Shown here piece after piece: positions 1 to 64,000 of a stretch of DNA of 64,000 nucleotides. A model generated the notes under the pieces. It made no database searches and was not told where the DNA came from. It saw only the letters and a program-made list of their open reading frames with translations. The stretch lies in sequence record NC_028950.1, one strand, 5' to 3'. The position numbers and the translations under genes are program-made. Each line of letters starts with the position of its first letter. Positions within the stretch are counted from its first letter, which is position 1.

Positions 1-59
1 TTCAGTAAAGCCGGAGGCGCTGCCGCTTTCTTTTTATAAAGGAGATTAGAAGCTAGCAT
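1..59 (-). CDS. 5' end of a lectin-family paralog (runs off window start), MLASNLLYKKKAAAPPALL...
   Basis: ATG at 59, 6 nt after the stop of the 66..674 gene. Open to position 1. The leader matches the MLSAMLLKKK and MHEPLLLYKK leaders of its neighbours. Not in the ORF track. Confidence 0.7.
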   Translation of the reverse strand, partial: MLASNLLYKKKAAAPPALL

Positions 60-65
60 AATTTG

Positions 66-674
66 TTACCATGCATTGTAGCCAGAAGGAAGCGGATGGA
101 CGAGATCTGTTCCGGCAAGCAATGTAGCTGAACTATTGGTGCCTGTTGCAGCCGCACCTGAGATCATCGGATAGAACAACGTTGCTGATGAGTAAGGCGT
201 ATAGTCGATCTGACTAAATGCCACGCCATTTTTGTAGAACTGGATCTTTTTTCCAGTCAGGTCCATTGCGACACCAATCACGTCATTGAGCCAGGCATAA
301 GTACCGTAAGCAAAACGTTGTGCAGTACCATAGAGCAATGCCGAAACGTTTGACGTGTAGCTATAGAGAAGCAGTTCGCCAGGACCACCCTGGTTCCAGG
401 GATGGAAGAGTCCTGTTGTCGAAGGCGCAACTCCGATACCAGGAGTATAACCACCACTACCGGATTCAACTCCAGTAATCTTGGCTTCGAAATACCATTT
501 TCCTGAAGAACGACCAATCGTTCCTCGTACCGATCCGCCGATAGTCGAATCGAATGTAACGGATTTATTTCCATTGGACAACGTGACTCCTGAAGAGTAC
601 ATGTCGCTAGGATTGAGTGTCAGTGTCGAAGATTGAACTATGGACTTCTTATAAAGAAGTAACGGTTCATGCAT
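66..674 (-). CDS. SPRY/B30.2 (concanavalin-A-like) domain protein, possibly tail-fibre/adhesin associated
   Basis: SPRY signature 'TLSNGNKSVT...GSVRGTIGRSSGKWYFEAKI...IGVA...NDVIGVAMDLTGKKIQFYKNG'. Start moved to M39 (674) because of a GGTGGA RBS and the 13-nt gap after the upstream stop. Confidence 0.8.
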   Translation of the reverse strand: MHEPLLLYKKSIVQSSTLTLNPSDMYSSGVTLSNGNKSVTFDSTIGGSVRGTIGRSSGKWYFEAKITGVESGSGGYTPGIGVAPSTTGLFHPWNQGGPGELLLYSYTSNVSALLYGTAQRFAYGTYAWLNDVIGVAMDLTGKKIQFYKNGVAFSQIDYTPYSSATLFYPMISGAAATGTNSSATLLAGTDLVHPLPSGYNAW

Positions 675-687
675 AATTCCACCAAAT

Positions 688-1359
688 TTAAACCAAACCA
701 CCAACAGGCGGCGTGAAGTTAGCCGTAATGATTGCGGAATCCCAGAATCCCCATTCGGCCGTGTATACACTAATGCCAGATTGACCAACCGTCATGCTGT
801 TAATACCAGAAACGGCTGAGTTATCTGTAAAATTAGGATAACCGTAGGTACTACCAGTACCGTTCGCCAACAGGATGGCTGCACCATTTATGTAAATGGT
901 GTTTACGTTAGCTTTTCGAACAAATGCAACGTGGTACCACGCTGTTGCCATTTGTGATTCGGTTATGCTGGCATCCCAACATGTACCGATGGTCGACATA
1001 GCAAAACCGAATTGCAATCGGTTGCCGAATCCACTGTCGCCGGTTCGGATCGTAAATCCGCTACCCATGATCGTGACATAGCCGGTTGCCCCAACCAATA
1101 ATACACGACACATCGCTGTAAAGTCAGCAGTACTAGCCCGACTACCAGAAGCATAGTTAACAGTATCGACTCCACTCAGGACTTTCGAATAACCGGAAAT
1201 CGAAATAGGAGGCGTTACAGGAGTGCCGGCAGTATGACTCGTGGGAGCAATCTTTCCAGTTGACGAATTGATGCTGTAATTATATCCCCACAAAGGCTGG
1301 ATTGAATTCAGCCCTCCGCCCGACGCTGCTTTTTTCTTTAAAAGCATCGCAGATAGCAT
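688..1359 (-). CDS. LamG-like (concanavalin A-like lectin/glucanase) domain protein
   Basis: 'WYHVAFVRKANVNTIYING' LamG motif; Ser/Thr/Gly-rich beta protein; N-terminal MLSAMLLKKK leader. Confidence 0.75.
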   Translation of the reverse strand: MLSAMLLKKKAASGGGLNSIQPLWGYNYSINSSTGKIAPTSHTAGTPVTPPISISGYSKVLSGVDTVNYASGSRASTADFTAMCRVLLVGATGYVTIMGSGFTIRTGDSGFGNRLQFGFAMSTIGTCWDASITESQMATAWYHVAFVRKANVNTIYINGAAILLANGTGSTYGYPNFTDNSAVSGINSMTVGQSGISVYTAEWGFWDSAIITANFTPPVGGLV

Positions 1360-1404
1360 TTTATTCTCGCAAATAAGTTTTAACTCGCTTCACAGTATCG
1401 ACCA

Positions 1405-1440: not shown

Positions 1441-3591
1441 TCAATACGTGTCGTAGATCATTCGCGTGTTTTTCTTGTTACTCATGAAAATGCCCATGGT
1501 TTCCAAGATGTGGTAGTAAGCGCCACAGCAATCCCGCACAATCTTCCGTGCGTTCGAACCAATCAGGATCTCATCCGGAATGCCAGACAACTGGATGATA
1601 CTGACAGGAACGTAAATCGTCGTCATGTACTTACGACCGATGCGAGCACATTCGTCTTGAATATCCTTCACGAGATCCTTGTTCTGAATCTGATCCAGAT
1701 AGACTTGCCAGTCCGACACGTTGCCGATTTCCAGAGAAACCTTCAGCGACGTATAGGGCGGTTCATCGACCATGCCATAGATCTTGCCGAACGTACGATT
1801 CCAGAAAATGTGGTTCCAGTACGGCGTGCGATCTGCATCTTTGATTTTGTACGCATCTGCTTTCTTCAAGTGAGCAGCGCGGAAGTATTCGGTATTACCC
1901 GACTTGACGTCTTCATAAATCGACCATTCTTTCTCGGCGACCATGTCAACAATCTCGTTCAGGTTAAGACCTTTACCATCCACCACAGCTTTCATGGATT
2001 CCAGCAGGAAGTCTTTCACTTCTGTCACGATCGCACCCGGCGTTGCCGAGGAGATCATATTTGCGCCCTTCAGTTCCAGGTCAGGCTTACGGAATACGTT
2101 GCCTTCCTGTGCTGTCTTCATGGCATAGTAATGCTTAGCCATCGAAGTTGGGCAGAAGATCTTGAACTTGTACTCGTTCTTCATCTGCACGTCGAACAGA
2201 CGATCCGGATGGACGCCATAGTTCGCAGACATCATTGCATGCAGGTGAGATGATGTTTGTGCGGCCAGATACACCACGACGTCAGAGGTCGATTCCATTT
2301 CGTCCGTGAAACCGATTTCGCCGTAAACACGACCAACCCATTCCTGAACGGTAAACAGAGTCGAGTCAGTATCGCCACCGAGAACTGAGCGACGAAGACT
2401 GGTCGGGAAGTTACCTGTGGATGCAGGCATGTTACCCGTGAGCCAGAAAGCATCGATCATCGACTGCACAGAGCACAGCGTATTGTTGATGTTCTTGGCA
2501 TTGGTTGCGAGCACGCCATAGTTGTGCGGACTTTCTTTCAGGATTTCCTTCGGCTTTTTGCCAACCGAGAAAGAACGGCAAATCTGACGCGACAGGTTAA
2601 CAGTATCTTCCGAAACCGTCTTGAGAACGAACTGTGCTTCATCAACCGGCATCGTTTCATCGATGAACTTCGACAGCTGATTCAGCAACGACACCACGAA
2701 ACTGGTGTTGTGCTTATACAGATGGTAGAAGTCACCAACATACACGAATGCTGCACGCTCAAGCGGCTTCATCGTTTCGACGAAATCCCACACAGACTGC
2801 ATGTGTTGGTTCGACTGGAAGTACAGCTGACGGCTGCGCTCGATGCATTCGTTGACGTCTTGCACCGTCGGCCAATGCAACTGGAACTTCTTCATCGCTT
2901 CTTCGACCTTATCCAGATCGGTGATAGCGCAGATCGACACGAGGTTATTCAGGATCGTGTCGCGGTCCATGTAGTGGCGATTGCCTTCGATGAACTTTTC
3001 GTTGTTTGCGTTACCGTAAGCGGTCGTATTCCGGCAGTTTGTCGTGAGCGACGAATGCGAAGTCGGATTAAATAGAGCCGTAGACGGAGTGAGCGAAGCC
3101 CCGGAGAGCGAGTTATTCGTGGTCTTTGCATTGTTCTGTCCGAGATCCTTAAACACATAGAGGACCATGTCCCCAGCATTCTTGGCATCGAACATCTGAT
3201 CTTTGAGCACCGACCGTTTCACGATGTTATCCATCGTGTAAAGAGACAGGAGCGATTGCCGAACATCCGGCGAGCAATACGACGTAAACGTCGGCGACAT
3301 CGATTCGTTGTTCTCGAATACGTCTGCGAGATAACGTGACATCGTGGTTTCTTTGAGCTCACGATCTTCGAAGTTCTCACGATGGAGATAACGCACCATC
3401 GGATCCCGGAATTCGAACAGACCACCGGGCTTCATGTTTTTGATCACAAACTCACGTGCTGCTTGCATCGTGATTCCCTTTCTCTTGGAGAGAAAGAGCG
3501 ATGCCTGGTCTACATAACCGTTGAGCACTTTCGTGTCGCGGCGGTAGTCCTCTCGTTCTTTACGGAAAGTTACAGGACGCAACTGATGCAT
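1441..3591 (-). CDS. Divergent family-B DNA polymerase, catalytic subunit (phiKZ gp50-like)
   Basis: Motif C 'VLGGDTDSTLF', motif B-like 'NAKTTNNSLSGA', 'KHYYA' and 'ELKG'. Its position downstream of PhuZ fits phiKZ-like synteny (recalled). Confidence 0.85.
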   Translation of the reverse strand: MHQLRPVTFRKEREDYRRDTKVLNGYVDQASLFLSKRKGITMQAAREFVIKNMKPGGLFEFRDPMVRYLHRENFEDRELKETTMSRYLADVFENNESMSPTFTSYCSPDVRQSLLSLYTMDNIVKRSVLKDQMFDAKNAGDMVLYVFKDLGQNNAKTTNNSLSGASLTPSTALFNPTSHSSLTTNCRNTTAYGNANNEKFIEGNRHYMDRDTILNNLVSICAITDLDKVEEAMKKFQLHWPTVQDVNECIERSRQLYFQSNQHMQSVWDFVETMKPLERAAFVYVGDFYHLYKHNTSFVVSLLNQLSKFIDETMPVDEAQFVLKTVSEDTVNLSRQICRSFSVGKKPKEILKESPHNYGVLATNAKNINNTLCSVQSMIDAFWLTGNMPASTGNFPTSLRRSVLGGDTDSTLFTVQEWVGRVYGEIGFTDEMESTSDVVVYLAAQTSSHLHAMMSANYGVHPDRLFDVQMKNEYKFKIFCPTSMAKHYYAMKTAQEGNVFRKPDLELKGANMISSATPGAIVTEVKDFLLESMKAVVDGKGLNLNEIVDMVAEKEWSIYEDVKSGNTEYFRAAHLKKADAYKIKDADRTPYWNHIFWNRTFGKIYGMVDEPPYTSLKVSLEIGNVSDWQVYLDQIQNKDLVKDIQDECARIGRKYMTTIYVPVSIIQLSGIPDEILIGSNARKIVRDCCGAYYHILETMGIFMSNKKNTRMIYDTY

Positions 3592-16811: not shown

Positions 16812-18992
16812 TCAATAAACGGTAGAACCAGAATCGACGACCTTTCGGTATACATCGTCGAGCAGATTCTTATCACCACCTTTTTGATACCCGATGCGTT
16901 TCTCTTCACGAGTCTTCTTGATCATGTCGGTGACGGAGAAGGTTTCGCCTTCTTCTTCCACGACACGGGAAACAAGAGATCCGATCTCGGATTCGAGTCG
17001 CATCTGAACAAAGTGGTCTTGTGAAGCAGCCAGTTTCTGTACCAGAGCCTGGATATCTTCACGCAACTGGCGTTGCTGGATTTCGAAGTGAGACATTTCG
17101 CGAGCGGACTTCTTCGCAAGCGTAGAGATCATCACCTGAGTATGGTCAATACCGTAGTAAGACAGGTTCTGACCAAACATAGCCAGGTAGCAAGCCAAGA
17201 GCCATGCCACACAGCCGTCGTCGTGCTGTCCCTTCGGGTGATCGACTCGACCATTCTTGACTTCGAGAGCCAGGATCTGATCGATTGTTTTGATATCGTT
17301 GACGCGGTCCATGCCATGACGAACAGCGTTTTGCAGAACTTGACCGTAGAGAATCGAACGAGCATTCTCGCCAGAGCCTGACGTGTTGTAGCCGAAGTAG
17401 GACTTGTACTTGGTGTACAAATCCCCCAGCACGTACTTGTCGGCACGTTTGATTTCTTCCAGGATATCGCGGTACTTATCGGGATCCTGAACGAGACGGT
17501 TAAAGAGTCGCTTGAATGCATTCTGCCCAGTCATGCGGAACTTCAAGCACAGCTGGTCAATGATTGCCGGACCCGTGTTCTTGCATTCGATCACGGCTAC
17601 GAGCTTAGGCCACTTCATCAGGATGTCGTAGAGCCAGAGCGAATAGTCAATGATGTTCGTCATGTTCACGTAGCACGTGCCAATGACTTCGAGTGTCGTC
17701 AGATCGACGTATTGCATTCCGATCTCATCTTTACCTTGAGCCTGGGAAGGATCAATGCCGAGTGCGACGTTGCCTTCAGCCATGATTTCATCACGCACTT
17801 TCAGGCTCACATACCACTTGGTCAGGTAACGAGTCTTCGGATCGATTTCGGCAACGAAATCTTCACGCTGGTTTTCACGAAGCGTGTTCAGTTGTTCTGT
17901 GGAGAGGGGAGATCCGCGGCCACCAGAAGTCCAGATGTTGAAGTAATCGCGATCGGCTTCTTCGCCGCTAATCATTGCCTTCTTGATGTTCTCGTAATGC
18001 TGCTGATCCGAGATACCAAGCATGCGGTGTCCGAACGTGCAGTTGATAGCAAAGCCGTTACTCGACGCTGCTTCCACCATCACCTTCAGGTCATCCCAGT
18101 TACGCGCATCATAGATCTTGTCCGTAAACGGGAACGAGTTCGTCAGGATCTGATAAGCGTAGGAACCATCACGGTCATCTTTCTTACCTGCGGTAGTCGC
18201 CAGGATAATGCCGTGGTGTGCGTTGTTTTCACGAGCCGAAACGAATGCCGCGTTGGTTGTCGACAGAATCGTCGTCAGCGTAGCTTTCAACCAGGAGATG
18301 TATGCAAATTCGTCAATCCGGATGTTGGCAGAAGTAAAGCCTCGGCCCACCTTGTAGGCACCCTTCTCATCCATCCGCGGAACGTGCGTTTCGTACTTGT
18401 TTTCCAGTGCGGACAAGTAGATGTATTCCTGGTTATTCGGATCCTTCTTCGGAATCGATCGCCTCAGATACGTAGGCAAGACTTCCTCGTATTCCTTCAG
18501 ACGCTCAATGTCGTTACGACGCAGCTGGTCTTCTTTCGTCAGCAAGTGAATGGACGAGTGAACCAGACCGAAGTTGAGTAGGTAACGATCGAGCGAAGCG
18601 ATGTTCACCGACTTACCAGTCTGACGAGGCTGAATCAGGAATGTCGTAATGTGGTTGAAGTAACTCCACCACAGAGCCAGGTTCCCGCGGTTCGCTAGAA
18701 CAGGACTCGGTTGCATTGCGCCCTGAACAGGGATGCGTGCAATCTCACGGAAATAGTACCAGGGGTTATCGAAACACTCCTGGGTAATCATGCCCTTGTA
18801 TTCGAAGGACAGATTCGGGTCGAACGGATCTACGCCGACCAGATATTTGTTGTGTAACGCCAGGGGCCAGAGGTTATTCTGGATTCCCATGTCGTCGAGA
18901 ATGTAACAGATGTCAACGAAGGACTTGTTTCGGGTTTCCAGATCAATGGTTGCATCCGGATACCGATTCCAGTCTTCTTGGAAAAGAATCAT
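16812..18992 (-). CDS. terL: Terminase large subunit (phiKZ gp25-like)
   Basis: Walker A 'QPRQTGKS', Walker B 'IRIDEFAY', 'ILATTAG' coupling motif, nuclease 'LGIDP' and 'HDDGCVAW'. Confidence 0.93.
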   Translation of the reverse strand: MILFQEDWNRYPDATIDLETRNKSFVDICYILDDMGIQNNLWPLALHNKYLVGVDPFDPNLSFEYKGMITQECFDNPWYYFREIARIPVQGAMQPSPVLANRGNLALWWSYFNHITTFLIQPRQTGKSVNIASLDRYLLNFGLVHSSIHLLTKEDQLRRNDIERLKEYEEVLPTYLRRSIPKKDPNNQEYIYLSALENKYETHVPRMDEKGAYKVGRGFTSANIRIDEFAYISWLKATLTTILSTTNAAFVSARENNAHHGIILATTAGKKDDRDGSYAYQILTNSFPFTDKIYDARNWDDLKVMVEAASSNGFAINCTFGHRMLGISDQQHYENIKKAMISGEEADRDYFNIWTSGGRGSPLSTEQLNTLRENQREDFVAEIDPKTRYLTKWYVSLKVRDEIMAEGNVALGIDPSQAQGKDEIGMQYVDLTTLEVIGTCYVNMTNIIDYSLWLYDILMKWPKLVAVIECKNTGPAIIDQLCLKFRMTGQNAFKRLFNRLVQDPDKYRDILEEIKRADKYVLGDLYTKYKSYFGYNTSGSGENARSILYGQVLQNAVRHGMDRVNDIKTIDQILALEVKNGRVDHPKGQHDDGCVAWLLACYLAMFGQNLSYYGIDHTQVMISTLAKKSAREMSHFEIQQRQLREDIQALVQKLAASQDHFVQMRLESEIGSLVSRVVEEEGETFSVTDMIKKTREEKRIGYQKGGDKNLLDDVYRKVVDSGSTVY

Positions 18993-19025
18993 AAAGGAAT
19001 CCTAGCACAGGGTCATAAGGTTAGT

Positions 19026-62743: not shown

Positions 62744-62779
62744 CATAATCCACTCTCCCTCACGGGAGAGTGGATTATG
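62744..62779. terminator. Perfect 16-bp bidirectional hairpin with CATA/TATG ends
   Basis: cataatccactctccc-tcac-gggagagtggattatg. Confidence 0.75.
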
Positions 62780-62785
62780 ACCCAT

Positions 62786-63472
62786 TTAGCTCGGATACGC
62801 ACCGCGAGCGGGCGTGAAGGTGTTCCAGTACTGCCAGCCTTGCCACATGCGCAAACGGTCCATATATCCGTTCATGGTAGTGTTCGCCATATTGCTTGAG
62901 TTACCGATCAGCATCGAGCCTGTATTATTCCCCCAAGTCCCTGACCAAGTAACTTCAGTATCTGGCACTCCGTTGCGCAAATAACGCAACGTGTTACCTT
63001 TCCTTGTAAAGCAATGGTGGATCCAATTGACAGGCGTAGTGATGAGGTTAGTGGACTTAAGCACAACTGATCCAGTATCATCCATAAAGCACGGATATCC
63101 TGCATTCGATCCAATATTTCCGACACCAGTCCCGGACGGACCTGATTTACTTAAAGCAGTTTGCCAGCCAGTAGTACCCTGACCACCAGCCAACCAATAT
63201 TCGATGGTAAAATCTCCGGTAAATTGGAGGTTTCCAGCGGTCTGTGCGTAAACGTAAGCAGTGCCGTTTGCGCCTAGATAAAAAGACTGTGATCCGTTAA
63301 TGAAAGTTGTAGATGAAAGAGTGCCTCCGTAATTTCCTGTTGTTCTCGACGTAGTCTGGAGGTCTTTTGGCGGATAGGTTTCGAAGTCCATGGCCAGCAC
63401 GAGTACGCCAGTAGGCGTATCGCTGGTCTGGGAAAACCCCGTCTTCTTTTTCATGAGCATCGCAGATAACAT
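62786..63472 (-). CDS. LamG-like (concanavalin A-like lectin/glucanase) domain protein
   Basis: 'GDFTIEYW', 'WIHHCFTRKGNTLRYLRNG', 'LIG...MNGYMDRLRMW'; leader MLSAMLMKKK. Confidence 0.85.
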   Translation of the reverse strand: MLSAMLMKKKTGFSQTSDTPTGVLVLAMDFETYPPKDLQTTSRTTGNYGGTLSSTTFINGSQSFYLGANGTAYVYAQTAGNLQFTGDFTIEYWLAGGQGTTGWQTALSKSGPSGTGVGNIGSNAGYPCFMDDTGSVVLKSTNLITTPVNWIHHCFTRKGNTLRYLRNGVPDTEVTWSGTWGNNTGSMLIGNSSNMANTTMNGYMDRLRMWQGWQYWNTFTPARGAYPS

Positions 63473-63554
63473 TTATTTTCTCGGAAGGTTAAATGCATAG
63501 GATCCGAAATGATCTTGTGATTTTAGGATAGAGACGATTAAGTAAGGATAGATT

Positions 63555-64000
63555 ATGCAAGCATTGGCGAAAATATCCGGCGCCTGGAAAAACGTCAAGC
63601 AAATTTTCATTAACCAGGCTGGTTCCTGGAAACAAGTCAAGCAAGGTTGGATAAAAGTAGACGGAGTCTGGAAGCAGTTCTACTCCGCTTTCACTCCAGT
63701 CCAAGCTACTGGTAGTATTGCAACTTACCAGAAAAGCCAATACAACAACAGCGTGGAAAATGGTCTGACTCTTCTTCAGCCAGCAGGCACTTTGTTTAGT
63801 GGATTTGCTTTATCGTATCTGGTCATGGGTATCACTTACGATTCCACGAGCAAAACGAAGATCATCAACTATGCATTCGGTTTGTATTTTGATACTTCTG
63901 GTCCACAGCCTACTGGAATCGGAAATATCAAGGTAACAAATTTGACCACAGGGATTGCTATGACTCTTTCACCAGAGCCTACTGCTTCTCCCTGGTTGTG
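63555..64000 (+). CDS. Tail-fibre/adhesin-like protein with a Trp-rich N-terminal repeat (truncated by window end)
   Basis: Translated by hand, open to 64000: MQALAKISGAWKNVKQIFINQAGSWKQVKQGWIKVDGVWKQFY... TAAGGA RBS. Not in the ORF track. Confidence 0.75.
   Translation, partial: MQALAKISGAWKNVKQIFINQAGSWKQVKQGWIKVDGVWKQFYSAFTPVQATGSIATYQKSQYNNSVENGLTLLQPAGTLFSGFALSYLVMGITYDSTSKTKIINYAFGLYFDTSGPQPTGIGNIKVTNLTTGIAMTLSPEPTASPWL

What the first reader, a model, noticed from the sequence alone, without database searches (positions are those of the whole stretch)
1..1359. Lectin-domain gene family with a shared N-terminal leader: possible plug-in receptor-binding cassettes
Seen: four genes begin with the same short motif despite different bodies. 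They are MLASNLLYKKK (start 59), MHEPLLLYKKS (674, SPRY), MLSAMLLKKK (1359, LamG) and MLSAMLMKKK (63472, LamG). The 1359 and 63472 genes lie 62 kb apart yet share 13 identical nt in the leader (TATCTGCGATGCT) and a similar CGAGAA(A)ATAA 5' sequence. These genes are also visibly more AT-rich than the core. Inference: the hydrophobic-plus-KKK leader is a docking or targeting tag that attaches interchangeable sugar-binding heads to a common virion scaffold, and it may also serve as a recombination anchor for module exchange. Paralogous adhesin-like families are known in some jumbo phages, but the leader's role is not known to me.
Basis: partly seen in the sequence, partly recalled or inferred. 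Interest (0 to 1): 0.65.

Follow-up and report, generated by a model that had tools for sequence, protein, structure and literature searches.

The report
Shared N-terminal tag on phage adhesin-like proteins

Summary
The window is Ralstonia phage RSL2 (Chiangmaivirus, phiKZ-like), bases 1-64000. The four leader genes exist, all on the minus strand.

The family is larger than reported. RSL2 has 8 members and Burkholderia phage SURPRISE13 has 10-12. Every LamG or SPRY ORF detectable in either genome carries the tag (7 regex matches against 0.5 expected by chance).

The tag sits on several unrelated body types: LamG, SPRY, discoidin, a Gly-rich domain, a Kelch propeller and others. AlphaFold2 places it outside the fold. 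It is conserved as protein, not as DNA.

Each gene cluster is a self-contained unit: a late-promoter-like motif, the gene or genes, then a terminator. The units have lower GC than the genome and sit at hot spots where related phages carry different cassettes.

A degenerate form of the tag occurs in other chimallivirus genera. In Serratia phage PCH45, a full-length homologue of the window's 1359 gene lies inside the tail-fibre operon. A preprint reports that operon as essential and detected in virions.

Verdict:
- Docking tag for interchangeable heads: partly supported, by context and analogy only.
- Recombination anchor: not supported.
- Sugar binding: untested.

I rate it a new variant of a known kind.

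The parts
1..59 (-). 5' end (19 codons plus 2 nt) of a tag-bearing LamG_3 gene. The tag occupies 27-59. The rest of the gene lies at the other end of the linear RSL2 record (223931..223293).
   Evidence: contiguity in relatives
66..674 (-). Tag-bearing SPRY gene (202 aa). The tag is codons 1-11 (642-674). Its ATG lies 13 nt after the stop of the upstream gene, so it is probably co-transcribed.
   Evidence: (AF2 pLDDT 91.9; residues 1-10 flexible; fold begins near residue 20)
688..1359 (-). Tag-bearing LamG-like gene (223 aa). The tag is codons 1-10 (1330-1359). Orthologues occur in all Chiangmaivirus relatives, and full-length homologues occur in PCH45 (gp108) and Erwinia phage RAY (gp114).
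1391..1400 (-). Promoter-like motif (minus strand CGATACTGTG) 31-39 nt before the ATG at 1359. It resembles the phiKZ-type late promoter T-A/G-T-G.
   Evidence: PMC4666361
1405..1430 (-). GC-rich hairpin after the DNA polymerase gene (1441-3591), directly upstream of the promoter-like motif. It marks the cassette boundary.
62744..62779 (-). Terminator-like hairpin (16-bp stem followed by a T run) directly after the stop of the 63472 gene.
62786..63472 (-). Tag-bearing LamG_3 gene (228 aa). The tag is codons 1-10 (63443-63472). There is no close orthologue at this locus in relatives.
63496..63503 (-). Promoter-like motif (ATCCTATG) 31 nt before the ATG at 63472.
63514..63521 (+). Divergent promoter-like motif (TCTTGTGA) 41 nt before ORF060 (63555 onward), a member of a second paralogue family.

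Best explanation
The short N-terminal stretch is a protein-level address tag, joined by a short linker to a small single-domain binding module. Its pattern is Met, a variable L/Q/H/F, an acidic or small residue, two variable residues, an invariant hydrophobic pair, an optional Y/L, then K-K-K/S/T.

The genes are made late from self-contained cassettes (promoter, gene or genes, terminator). These cassettes are gained, lost and replaced at a few genomic hot spots.

The tag most likely docks all these heads onto one shared partner in the virion. The tail-fibre complex is the best candidate (RSL2 ORF158/157/156, PCH45 gp111-gp107). That would give the phage a changeable set of surface-binding modules.

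Shown: the family, the architecture, protein-level conservation, cassette structure and turnover, and the position inside the tail-fibre operon in PCH45.

Inferred: late timing, virion location in RSL2, the identity of the partner, and what the heads bind.
For: Family and specificity:
- RSL2 has 8 members and SURPRISE13 has 10-12.
- HMMs of both main body families hit only tag-bearing ORFs in the two genomes.
- The regex finds 7 and 10 matches against about 0.5 expected by chance.

Portability:
- The tag is found on LamG_3, SPRY, F5/8-type-C, Gly_rich_2, a Kelch propeller and at least two unnamed bodies.

Outside the fold:
- In the AF2 SPRY model (pLDDT 91.9), residues 1-10 score 57 and have no secondary structure.
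- In the LamG model, residues 1-16 score below 50.

Protein-level constraint:
- Across 32 leaders, position 6 is L in 31, position 7 is L in 27 and M in 5, and the K-K pair is present in all 32, while positions 2-5 vary.
- Lys and Leu codons vary between copies.
- Metagenomic relatives at 31-83% body identity keep the tag.

Cassettes:
- A shared motif lies upstream of every unit in RSL2 and SURPRISE13.
- It resembles the phiKZ late TATG promoter (PMC4666361) and also precedes the large terminase and internal-head-protein genes.
- A terminator hairpin follows the 63472 gene.
- GC is lower than the genome average.
- Between RSL2 and SURPRISE13 the flanks are 72-85% identical, but the cassettes share no nucleotide homology.

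Virion link:
- PCH45 gp108 is a full-length homologue of the 1359 protein (35% identity, E 2e-30, aligned from residue 1).
- gp108 and the tag-bearing gp109 lie between tail fibre gp111 and the DUF4376 and DUF1353 chaperone-like genes.
- The SURPRISE13 gp104 body matches phrog_6011, 'virion structural protein', at 5e-31.
- Foldseek and PHROG neighbours include tail-fibre, baseplate-wedge and structural proteins.
- In other phages, small SPRY proteins with their own short N-terminal leaders are encoded directly after a tail-fibre gene that has a conserved C-terminus.
Against: - No proteomic or structural datum for any RSL2 member was available. The RSL2/RSF1 virion MS paper and the PCH45 data table are not held.
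- The preprint sentence speaks of the operon as a whole and does not list gp108 or gp109 individually.
- Most RSL2 cassettes are not next to tail genes; they lie beside DNA polymerase genes, thymidylate kinase and the endolysin.
- The 'virion structural protein' labels are annotation-level only.
- No docking partner or interface was identified.
- The heads lack any obvious trimerisation neck, which fibre-tip proteins usually have.
- SPRY and Kelch domains usually bind proteins, so an intracellular role is possible.
Confidence: 0.55

Rival explanations
1. The tag directs the proteins to a place in the infected cell other than the virion. Candidates are the inner membrane where chimallivirus procapsids form, the nuclear shell, or the envelope. 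There the heads would bind host or phage molecules.
For: - A hydrophobic stretch followed by several basic residues could bind anionic surfaces (sequence).
- SPRY and Kelch bodies are typical protein-binding modules.
- Most cassettes are not in structural gene blocks.
- The tag is so far confined to nucleus-forming phages.
Against: - The hydrophobic run is too short for a membrane span, and its order (hydrophobic then basic) is the reverse of a Sec signal peptide.
- Two PCH45 members sit in the tail-fibre operon that is reported in virions.
- The bodies' nearest labelled phage relatives are structural proteins.
Confidence: 0.15
2. The tag is recognised by an assembly chaperone, for example the DUF1353 or DUF4376 tail-fibre assembly proteins, and is not itself the final attachment point.
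For: - In PCH45 the two tag-bearing genes are flanked by the DUF4376 and DUF1353 genes.
- The DUF1353 gene of RSL2 and SURPRISE13 carries the same promoter-like motif.
Against: No interaction data exist. This reading still places the proteins in the fibre-assembly pathway, so it refines the main explanation more than it opposes it.
Confidence: 0.1
3. The tag is a capsid-targeting sequence, as on the T4 internal proteins. It would load the proteins into the head for ejection with the DNA.
For: - It is a short conserved N-terminal leader on diverse, fast-changing small proteins.
- The same promoter-like motif precedes an internal-head-protein family gene.
- In PCH45, gp34 follows the major capsid gene.
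Against: - Several members have no acidic residue within their first 40 residues, so no protease-type cleavage motif follows the tag. That the phiKZ-type head protease cuts after a Glu-containing motif is from my own knowledge.
- Lectin-like beta-sandwiches and a Kelch propeller are unusual cargo.
- The operon context in PCH45 points to the tail fibre.
Confidence: 0.07
4. The tag has no targeting role. It persists through common descent, or because an A-rich, Lys-codon start favours translation initiation.
For: - The AAA/AAG-rich start is A-rich.
- Many members are LamG or SPRY paralogues that could share ancestry.
Against: - The tag is on bodies from different Pfam families and folds, which requires fusion events.
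- The invariant positions are the hydrophobic pair and K-K, while codons vary.
- A related tag persists across genera.
- It lies outside the fold and is followed by a variable linker.
Confidence: 0.1
5. The leader, together with its 5' region, serves mainly as a homology anchor for recombination that swaps heads.
For: - Two copies 62 kb apart share 13 identical nt and a similar 5' end.
- Leader variants are paired with different bodies in different phages. For example, the L-L-Y-K-K variant is on a LamG body in RSL2 and on a SPRY body in RsoM3USA.
Against: - The longest exact run between any two RSL2 leaders is 13 nt, and most are 6-9 nt.
- Synonymous sites differ freely.
- The RSL2 versus SURPRISE13 breakpoints lie outside whole cassettes, including promoter and terminator.
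Confidence: 0.05

Closest known systems
Modular phage receptor-binding proteins with a conserved N-terminal attachment part and exchangeable distal heads (lactococcal phage RBPs, T7-like fibres, multi-tailspike phages). This comparison is from my own knowledge.
   Same: Paralogues and orthologues share the N-terminus while the distal binding domain varies. One phage carries several different heads. The heads are beta-sandwich modules.
   Different: Here the shared part is only 10-11 residues plus a linker, not a folded domain of 100 residues or more. It sits on single-domain proteins of at least six body types. The genes are dispersed cassettes, not part of one tail module. Virion attachment is unproven.
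Burkholderia phage FLC9 gp307/gp308
   Same: They are tandem paralogues with different LamG_3 heads behind an identical N-terminal part.
   Different: The shared part in FLC9 is a domain of about 150 residues, and the short tag is absent.
Small distal adhesins encoded directly after a tail-fibre gene. The T4/T2 gp38 arrangement is from my own knowledge; the metagenomic SPRY proteins in loci L015-L017 were seen here.
   Same: A small binding protein with a short hydrophobic N-terminal leader follows a fibre gene whose C-terminus is conserved. PCH45 gp108 and gp109 sit in the fibre operon.
   Different: The leader sequences differ. In RSL2 the genes are not adjacent to the fibre gene.
T4 capsid-targeting sequence on internal proteins (from my own knowledge)
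   Same: A leader of about ten residues shared by diverse, fast-changing small proteins.
   Different: No protease site follows the tag here. The bodies are binding modules. The gene context points to the tail, not the head.
Phage morons
   Same: Each unit has its own promoter-like motif and terminator, lower GC, and a variable presence between conserved blocks.
   Different: Morons are usually unrelated to one another and are expressed from prophages. These units form one tagged family in a lytic jumbo phage and carry a phage late-type promoter motif.

Membership tests
Laminin_G_3 / concanavalin A-like superfamily (Pfam PF13385) | The profile match reaches the curated cut-off of 27.6 bits. 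| tested here: met
   63472 gene 47.0 bits, record-end gene 47.8, 97780 gene 49.1, 86035 gene 43.7. The 1359 gene scores 26.7, just under the cut-off, but its PCH45 homologue scores 54.3.
SPRY (Pfam PF00622) | The profile match reaches the cut-off of 26.3 bits, and the fold is SPRY/B30.2. | tested here: met
   674 gene 29.8 bits; 179766 gene 28.6; 180360 gene 44.2. The AF2 model matches the TRIM9 and Ash2L SPRY domains at probability 1.00 and TM up to 0.84.
Lectin in the functional sense (carbohydrate binding) | A demonstrated or conserved sugar-binding site. | not tested
   No ligand-site analysis was done. SPRY and Kelch bodies usually bind proteins.
Modular phage receptor-binding proteins | A shared N-terminal attachment part with variable distal binding domains. 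| tested here: met
Modular phage receptor-binding proteins | Encoded in the tail or baseplate module. | tested here: inconclusive
   PCH45 gp108 and gp109 are in the fibre operon. RSL2 ORF059 lies near baseplate genes and the 97780 gene lies next to a structural protein gene. The other members lie beside replication or lysis genes.
Modular phage receptor-binding proteins | Present in the virion and determining adsorption. | not testable with these tools
   There is only an operon-level statement for PCH45. The RSL2 virion MS paper is not held.
T4-type capsid-targeting sequence proteins | The leader is followed by a prohead-protease cleavage site. | tested here: not met
   Several members have no acidic residue within their first 40 residues. 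The protease motif itself is from my own knowledge.
Sec, Tat or lipoprotein signal peptides | A basic n-region, then a hydrophobic core of at least 7-15 residues, then a cleavage site or lipobox Cys. | tested here: not met
   The order is reversed (hydrophobic then basic), the hydrophobic run is 2-3 invariant residues, and there is no Cys.
Morons | Own promoter and terminator, deviant composition, and variable presence between conserved genes. | tested here: met
   Promoter activity itself is inferred.

The most novel reading that the evidence does not exclude
Chimalliviruses have a minimal, portable N-terminal address tag of about ten residues that is enough to load any small binding module onto one virion scaffold, probably the tail fibre. 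That would make an open-ended plug-in adhesin set, expanded to 8-12 heads in Chiangmaivirus. It could help explain the cross-genus host ranges reported for these phages.
Probability: 0.3. Interest if true: 0.75.

Novelty: new variant of a known kind. Interest (0 to 1): 0.6.

Why it matters
Receptor-binding proteins of nucleus-forming jumbo phages are largely unidentified. The SURPRISE13 paper states that its receptor-binding proteins are still to be found.

A family-wide tag gives a simple sequence handle for listing candidate host-interaction proteins in these genomes. Current annotation truncates or misses many of them.

It also points to one testable attachment site.

If the tag really is a ten-residue docking peptide, it would be one of the smallest attachment modules known for phage adhesins. 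It would also explain how these phages keep many different heads.

Tried and rejected
- The profile search of the 1.84-billion-protein library with the LamG alignment returned only giant multi-LamG repeat proteins. It said nothing about how the tag is distributed.
- The exact-pattern scan of IMG/VR for the K-K-K form of the tag gave 106 hits, of which only RSF1 is a true ORF start. That shows the K-K-K form is lineage-specific, but it added no new relatives.
- The RSL2/RSF1 virion proteomics paper (pmid 27081857) is not held. The PCH45 preprint has no supplements held, and its main text does not mention gp34, gp108, gp4 or gp8 individually.
- The Erwinia RAY / Deimos-Minion MS table was made from crude lysates. 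Its 'gp114' is Deimos-Minion numbering for RAY gp110, not the tag-bearing RAY gp114.
- The phiRP31 virion proteome was not followed up. tblastn with the ORF059 and ORF181 bodies found no homologues in RP12 or RP31.
- Programmed frameshifting or slippage on the Lys codons was considered and dropped. The A runs are six nucleotides or fewer and differ between copies.
- A signal peptide and an internal-protein leader were considered and rejected (see the membership tests).
Full report
WHAT THE WINDOW IS

The window is identical to bases 1-64000 of Ralstonia phage RSL2 (NC_028950.1, 223,932 bp, genus Chiangmaivirus). RSL2 is a phiKZ-like jumbo phage with a nuclear-shell protein, PhuZ tubulin and split multisubunit RNA polymerases.

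CHECK OF THE OBSERVATION

All four genes exist, on the minus strand.

- The gene that starts at 59 leaves the window. It continues in frame at the other end of the linear record as a 213-residue LamG_3 body.
- The circular RsoM3USA record shows the same arrangement without a break: DNA polymerase, tandem cassettes, then the ORF224 homologue. SURPRISE13 gp1 is an uninterrupted orthologue.
- Pfam confirms SPRY for the 674 gene and LamG_3 for the 63472 gene. The 1359 gene is just under the cut-off.
- The 13-nt identity and the similar 5' ends are real.
- RefSeq places the starts of ORF001, ORF002, ORF059, ORF083 and ORF093 downstream of the tag, and it does not annotate the gene that spans the record ends.

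THE FAMILY IS LARGER AND TIGHTLY DEFINED

A regex scan of all six frames finds eight members in RSL2: starts 59, 674, 1359, 63472, 86035, 97780, 179766 and 180360. The bodies are LamG_3 in five and SPRY in three.

Burkholderia phage SURPRISE13 was fetched whole as L006-L010. It has ten clear members (gp1, gp2, gp62, gp63, gp64, gp90, gp91, gp103, gp104, gp195) and two with degenerate tags (gp89 and an unannotated ORF at 186.2-186.9 kb).

Shuffling controls give 0.53 and 0.58 expected matches against 7 and 10 observed. HMMs built from the two main body families hit only tag-bearing ORFs in both genomes. The tag and the small beta-sandwich bodies therefore go together without exception at this sensitivity.

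Counts by column for 32 leaders from RSL2, SURPRISE13, RsoM3USA, RSF1 and metagenomes:

| Position | Residues (count) |
|---|---|
| 1 | M 32 |
| 2 | L 16, Q 8, H 6, F 2 |
| 3 | E 13, A 10, D 6, S 2, T 1 |
| 4 | A 13, S 8, P 4, V 3, T 3, G 1 |
| 5 | M 11, N 7, L 7, S 3, others 4 |
| 6 | L 31, M 1 |
| 7 | L 27, M 5 |
| optional extra residue | Y 8, L 4, S 1, none 19 |
| K-K pair | K-K 32 |
| last | K 22, S 5, T 4, V 1 |

THE TAG IS A SEPARATE, PORTABLE MODULE

It is joined to bodies of different Pfam families:
- LamG_3 and SPRY
- F5/8 type C (SURPRISE13 gp90 and gp91)
- Gly_rich_2 (gp103)
- a phrog_6011-type body (gp104)
- a phrog_1062-type body (the unannotated SURPRISE13 ORF)
- in PCH45, a Kelch propeller

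AlphaFold2 on the SPRY member (56-sequence alignment, pLDDT 91.9) leaves residues 1-10 unstructured at pLDDT 57, and the sandwich starts near residue 20. The shallower LamG model puts residues 1-16 below pLDDT 50, with a low-confidence helix at 2-8.

After the tag comes a variable linker of 5-12 residues rich in S, T, G, A and P.

Conservation is at the protein level. Leu and Lys codons differ between copies. Orthologues of the 1359 gene vary at positions 2-5 but keep the hydrophobic pair and the lysines. Metagenomic relatives with 31-83% body identity keep the tag.

CASSETTE ANATOMY AND TURNOVER

Every first gene of a cluster is preceded, 26-41 nt before its ATG, by a motif of the form (G/A)AT(C/A)(C/T)T(A/G)TGA(C/T). 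The motif often lies directly after the hairpin that ends the upstream gene.

Of only eight genome-wide matches to the stricter RSL2 version, four are these sites. All seven SURPRISE13 units carry the motif, which makes them an independent test set.

The core resembles the phiKZ late promoter TATG, whose G is the transcription start (PMC4666361). The same core precedes the large terminase gene, an internal-head-protein family gene and the DUF1353 gene in both phages. Late expression is thus inferred, not shown.

The 63472 gene is followed by a terminator-like hairpin with a 16-bp stem. All eight members have lower GC than the genome, 45.5-49.7% against 52.1%. For that composition statistic alone, the pieces of the public record were concatenated in memory. 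Nothing was saved.

Between RSL2 and SURPRISE13 the flanks align at 72-85% nucleotide identity. The cassettes fall in gaps without homology. The number, orientation and body type of the cassettes differ between the two phages.

| RSL2 interval | RSL2 content | SURPRISE13 counterpart |
|---|---|---|
| 62744-64108 | ORF059 (tag-bearing) and ORF060 | gp62-gp64 |
| 85974-86788 | ORF083 (tag-bearing) | gp88-gp91 |
| 97078-97892 | 97780 gene (tag-bearing) | gp103, gp104 |
| 179141-180469 | ORF180, ORF181 (tag-bearing) | unannotated ORF and gp195 |

Six of the eight RSL2 members rank in the lowest 7% of protein identity to their best SURPRISE13 match. The 1359-type gene is the exception: it is conserved in every relative.

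RECOMBINATION ANCHOR

The longest exact run shared by any two RSL2 leaders is 13 nt, and most are 6-9 nt. Breakpoints between the phages lie outside whole units.

One hint goes the other way. The L-L-Y-K-K variant sits on a LamG body in RSL2 and SURPRISE13 but on the SPRY body in RsoM3USA.

I therefore rate the anchor idea as unsupported, not as excluded.

BEYOND THE GENUS

An exact-pattern scan of IMG/VR shows that the K-K-K form is confined to this lineage.

A degenerate form, M-L-E/D-x-hydrophobic-hydrophobic followed after a few residues by G/K, heads homologous small proteins in several other phages:
- Serratia phage PCH45
- Erwinia phages pEa_SNUABM_37 and RAY
- several large IMG/VR contigs

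PCH45, fetched whole, has at least seven such genes:

| PCH45 gene | Body |
|---|---|
| gp4 | LamG_3 |
| gp8 | no Pfam match |
| gp10 | no Pfam match |
| gp34 | LamG_3; directly after the capsid gene gp33 |
| gp102 | Kelch |
| gp108 | LamG_3 |
| gp109 | no Pfam match; GTG start; same body type as RSL2 ORF185 |

THE LINK TO THE VIRION

PCH45 gp108 aligns with the window's 1359 protein from residue 1 to the end (35% identity, E 2e-30).

gp108 and gp109 lie between the tail fibre gp111 (1156 aa), gp110 (DUF4376) and gp107 (DUF1353). My gene numbering agrees with the preprint: the 33rd CDS is the 778-residue protein that the preprint calls the major capsid protein, gp33.

The preprint 10.64898/2025.12.19.695335 reports 90 proteins in purified PCH45 virions. 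[quoted passage not shown] The per-gene table is not held here.

RSL2 has the corresponding ORF158-ORF157-ORF156 operon without tag genes.

Further indirect support:
- SURPRISE13 gp104 matches a PHROG labelled 'virion structural protein'.
- The LamG bodies match parts of 'baseplate wedge' and 'virion structural protein' PHROGs.
- The SPRY model's viral neighbours include tail-fibre and minor-tail proteins.
- SPRY domains occur at the distal end of tail proteins in Xanthomonas and Methylophilales phages.
- In unrelated metagenomic phages, SPRY proteins of about 190 residues, with their own short hydrophobic leaders, are encoded with overlapping stop and start directly after a tail-fibre-like gene that has a conserved C-terminus.

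MOST LIKELY MECHANISM

The tag is a protein-level address peptide on a flexible linker. It brings a changeable set of small binding modules to one partner, most likely the tail-fibre complex. The modules are produced late from moron-like cassettes.

The steps shown and the steps inferred are listed under the best explanation. I put this reading at about 0.55. The rivals are a non-virion destination, chaperone recognition, a capsid-targeting leader, no function, and a recombination anchor. Each is scored in its own section.

COMPARISON WITH WHAT IS KNOWN, AND NOVELTY

Conserved N-terminal attachment parts with exchangeable heads are a known principle of phage receptor-binding proteins. FLC9 gp307 and gp308 show the ordinary form of it, with a shared domain of about 150 residues.

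Three things are different here:
- the shared part is only ten or eleven residues
- it sits on at least six body types
- the genes are dispersed as late cassettes in nucleus-forming phages

Full-text searches for the genus and its phages found no description of the tag. The SURPRISE13 paper lists the lectin-like genes only as accessory proteins and says the receptor-binding proteins are unknown.

I file it as a new variant of a known kind, with interest 0.6.

Noticed in passing
window 63555-64000 (ORF060, continues to 64106 in the record); RSL2 85284-85973 (ORF082; L003:35284-35973): A second paralogue family. ORF060 and ORF082 share only their first 45 or so residues (cross-hits of phrog_25859 and phrog_36019 at positions 1-45) and have different bodies; ORF082 is ILEI-like. 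Each is paired head-to-head with a tag-bearing gene (ORF059, ORF083), with back-to-back promoter-like motifs about 10 nt apart. The metagenomic contig L012 has the same kind of gene directly after a tag-bearing LamG gene.
   Followed up: partly
RSL2 181179-184219 (ORF183-185; L002:7179-10219); SURPRISE13 186222-186908 (L009:36222-36908, minus strand): Three tandem paralogues of a phrog_1062-type body lie next to the SPRY cassettes. ORF183 and ORF184 start with what reads like a fibronectin-III-type domain in place of the tag (judged by eye, not checked with a profile). ORF185 has a degenerate tag. SURPRISE13 has one unannotated copy with a tag variant, and PCH45 gp109 in the tail-fibre operon has the same body type.
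   Followed up: partly
window 66-602, 688-951, 62786-63460; RSL2 86047, 97070-97456; RsoM3USA 179661-180302: Public annotation truncates or misses many family members. The annotated starts lie downstream of the tag. The RSL2 gene that spans the record ends is unannotated, and so are ORFs in SURPRISE13 and RsoM3USA.
   Followed up: yes
window 18992-19019 (upstream of the large terminase gene); RSL2 164886, 150574, 143822, 214803, 213315: The same promoter-like core, (C/T)T(A/G)TGA(C/T) 26-46 nt before the ATG, precedes the large terminase gene, an internal-head-protein family gene, the DUF1353 gene and a few others. The sites are conserved in position in SURPRISE13. This is probably the late promoter class of this genus.
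   Followed up: partly
RSL2 72899-84890 (outside the window; L003:22899-34890): A block of four radical-SAM genes with dihydrofolate reductase and, in SURPRISE13, 2OG-Fe(II) oxygenase and cupin genes. This is an unusual enzyme cluster for a phage.
   Followed up: no
L011:4469-6615 (Burkholderia phage FLC9 gp308, gp307): Tandem paralogues with a nearly identical N-terminal domain of about 150 residues and different LamG_3 heads. This is the conventional version of the plug-in head design, in an unrelated 322-kb Burkholderia phage.
   Followed up: partly
L015:8742-10588; L017:7875-10570: In two unrelated metagenomic phages, a tail-fibre-like gene ending in the same conserved C-terminal stretch of about 20 residues is followed, with overlapping stop and start, by a SPRY protein of about 190 residues with its own short hydrophobic N-terminal leader. 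Many similar small SPRY proteins in metagenomes carry lineage-specific leaders (P0028-P0122).
   Followed up: partly
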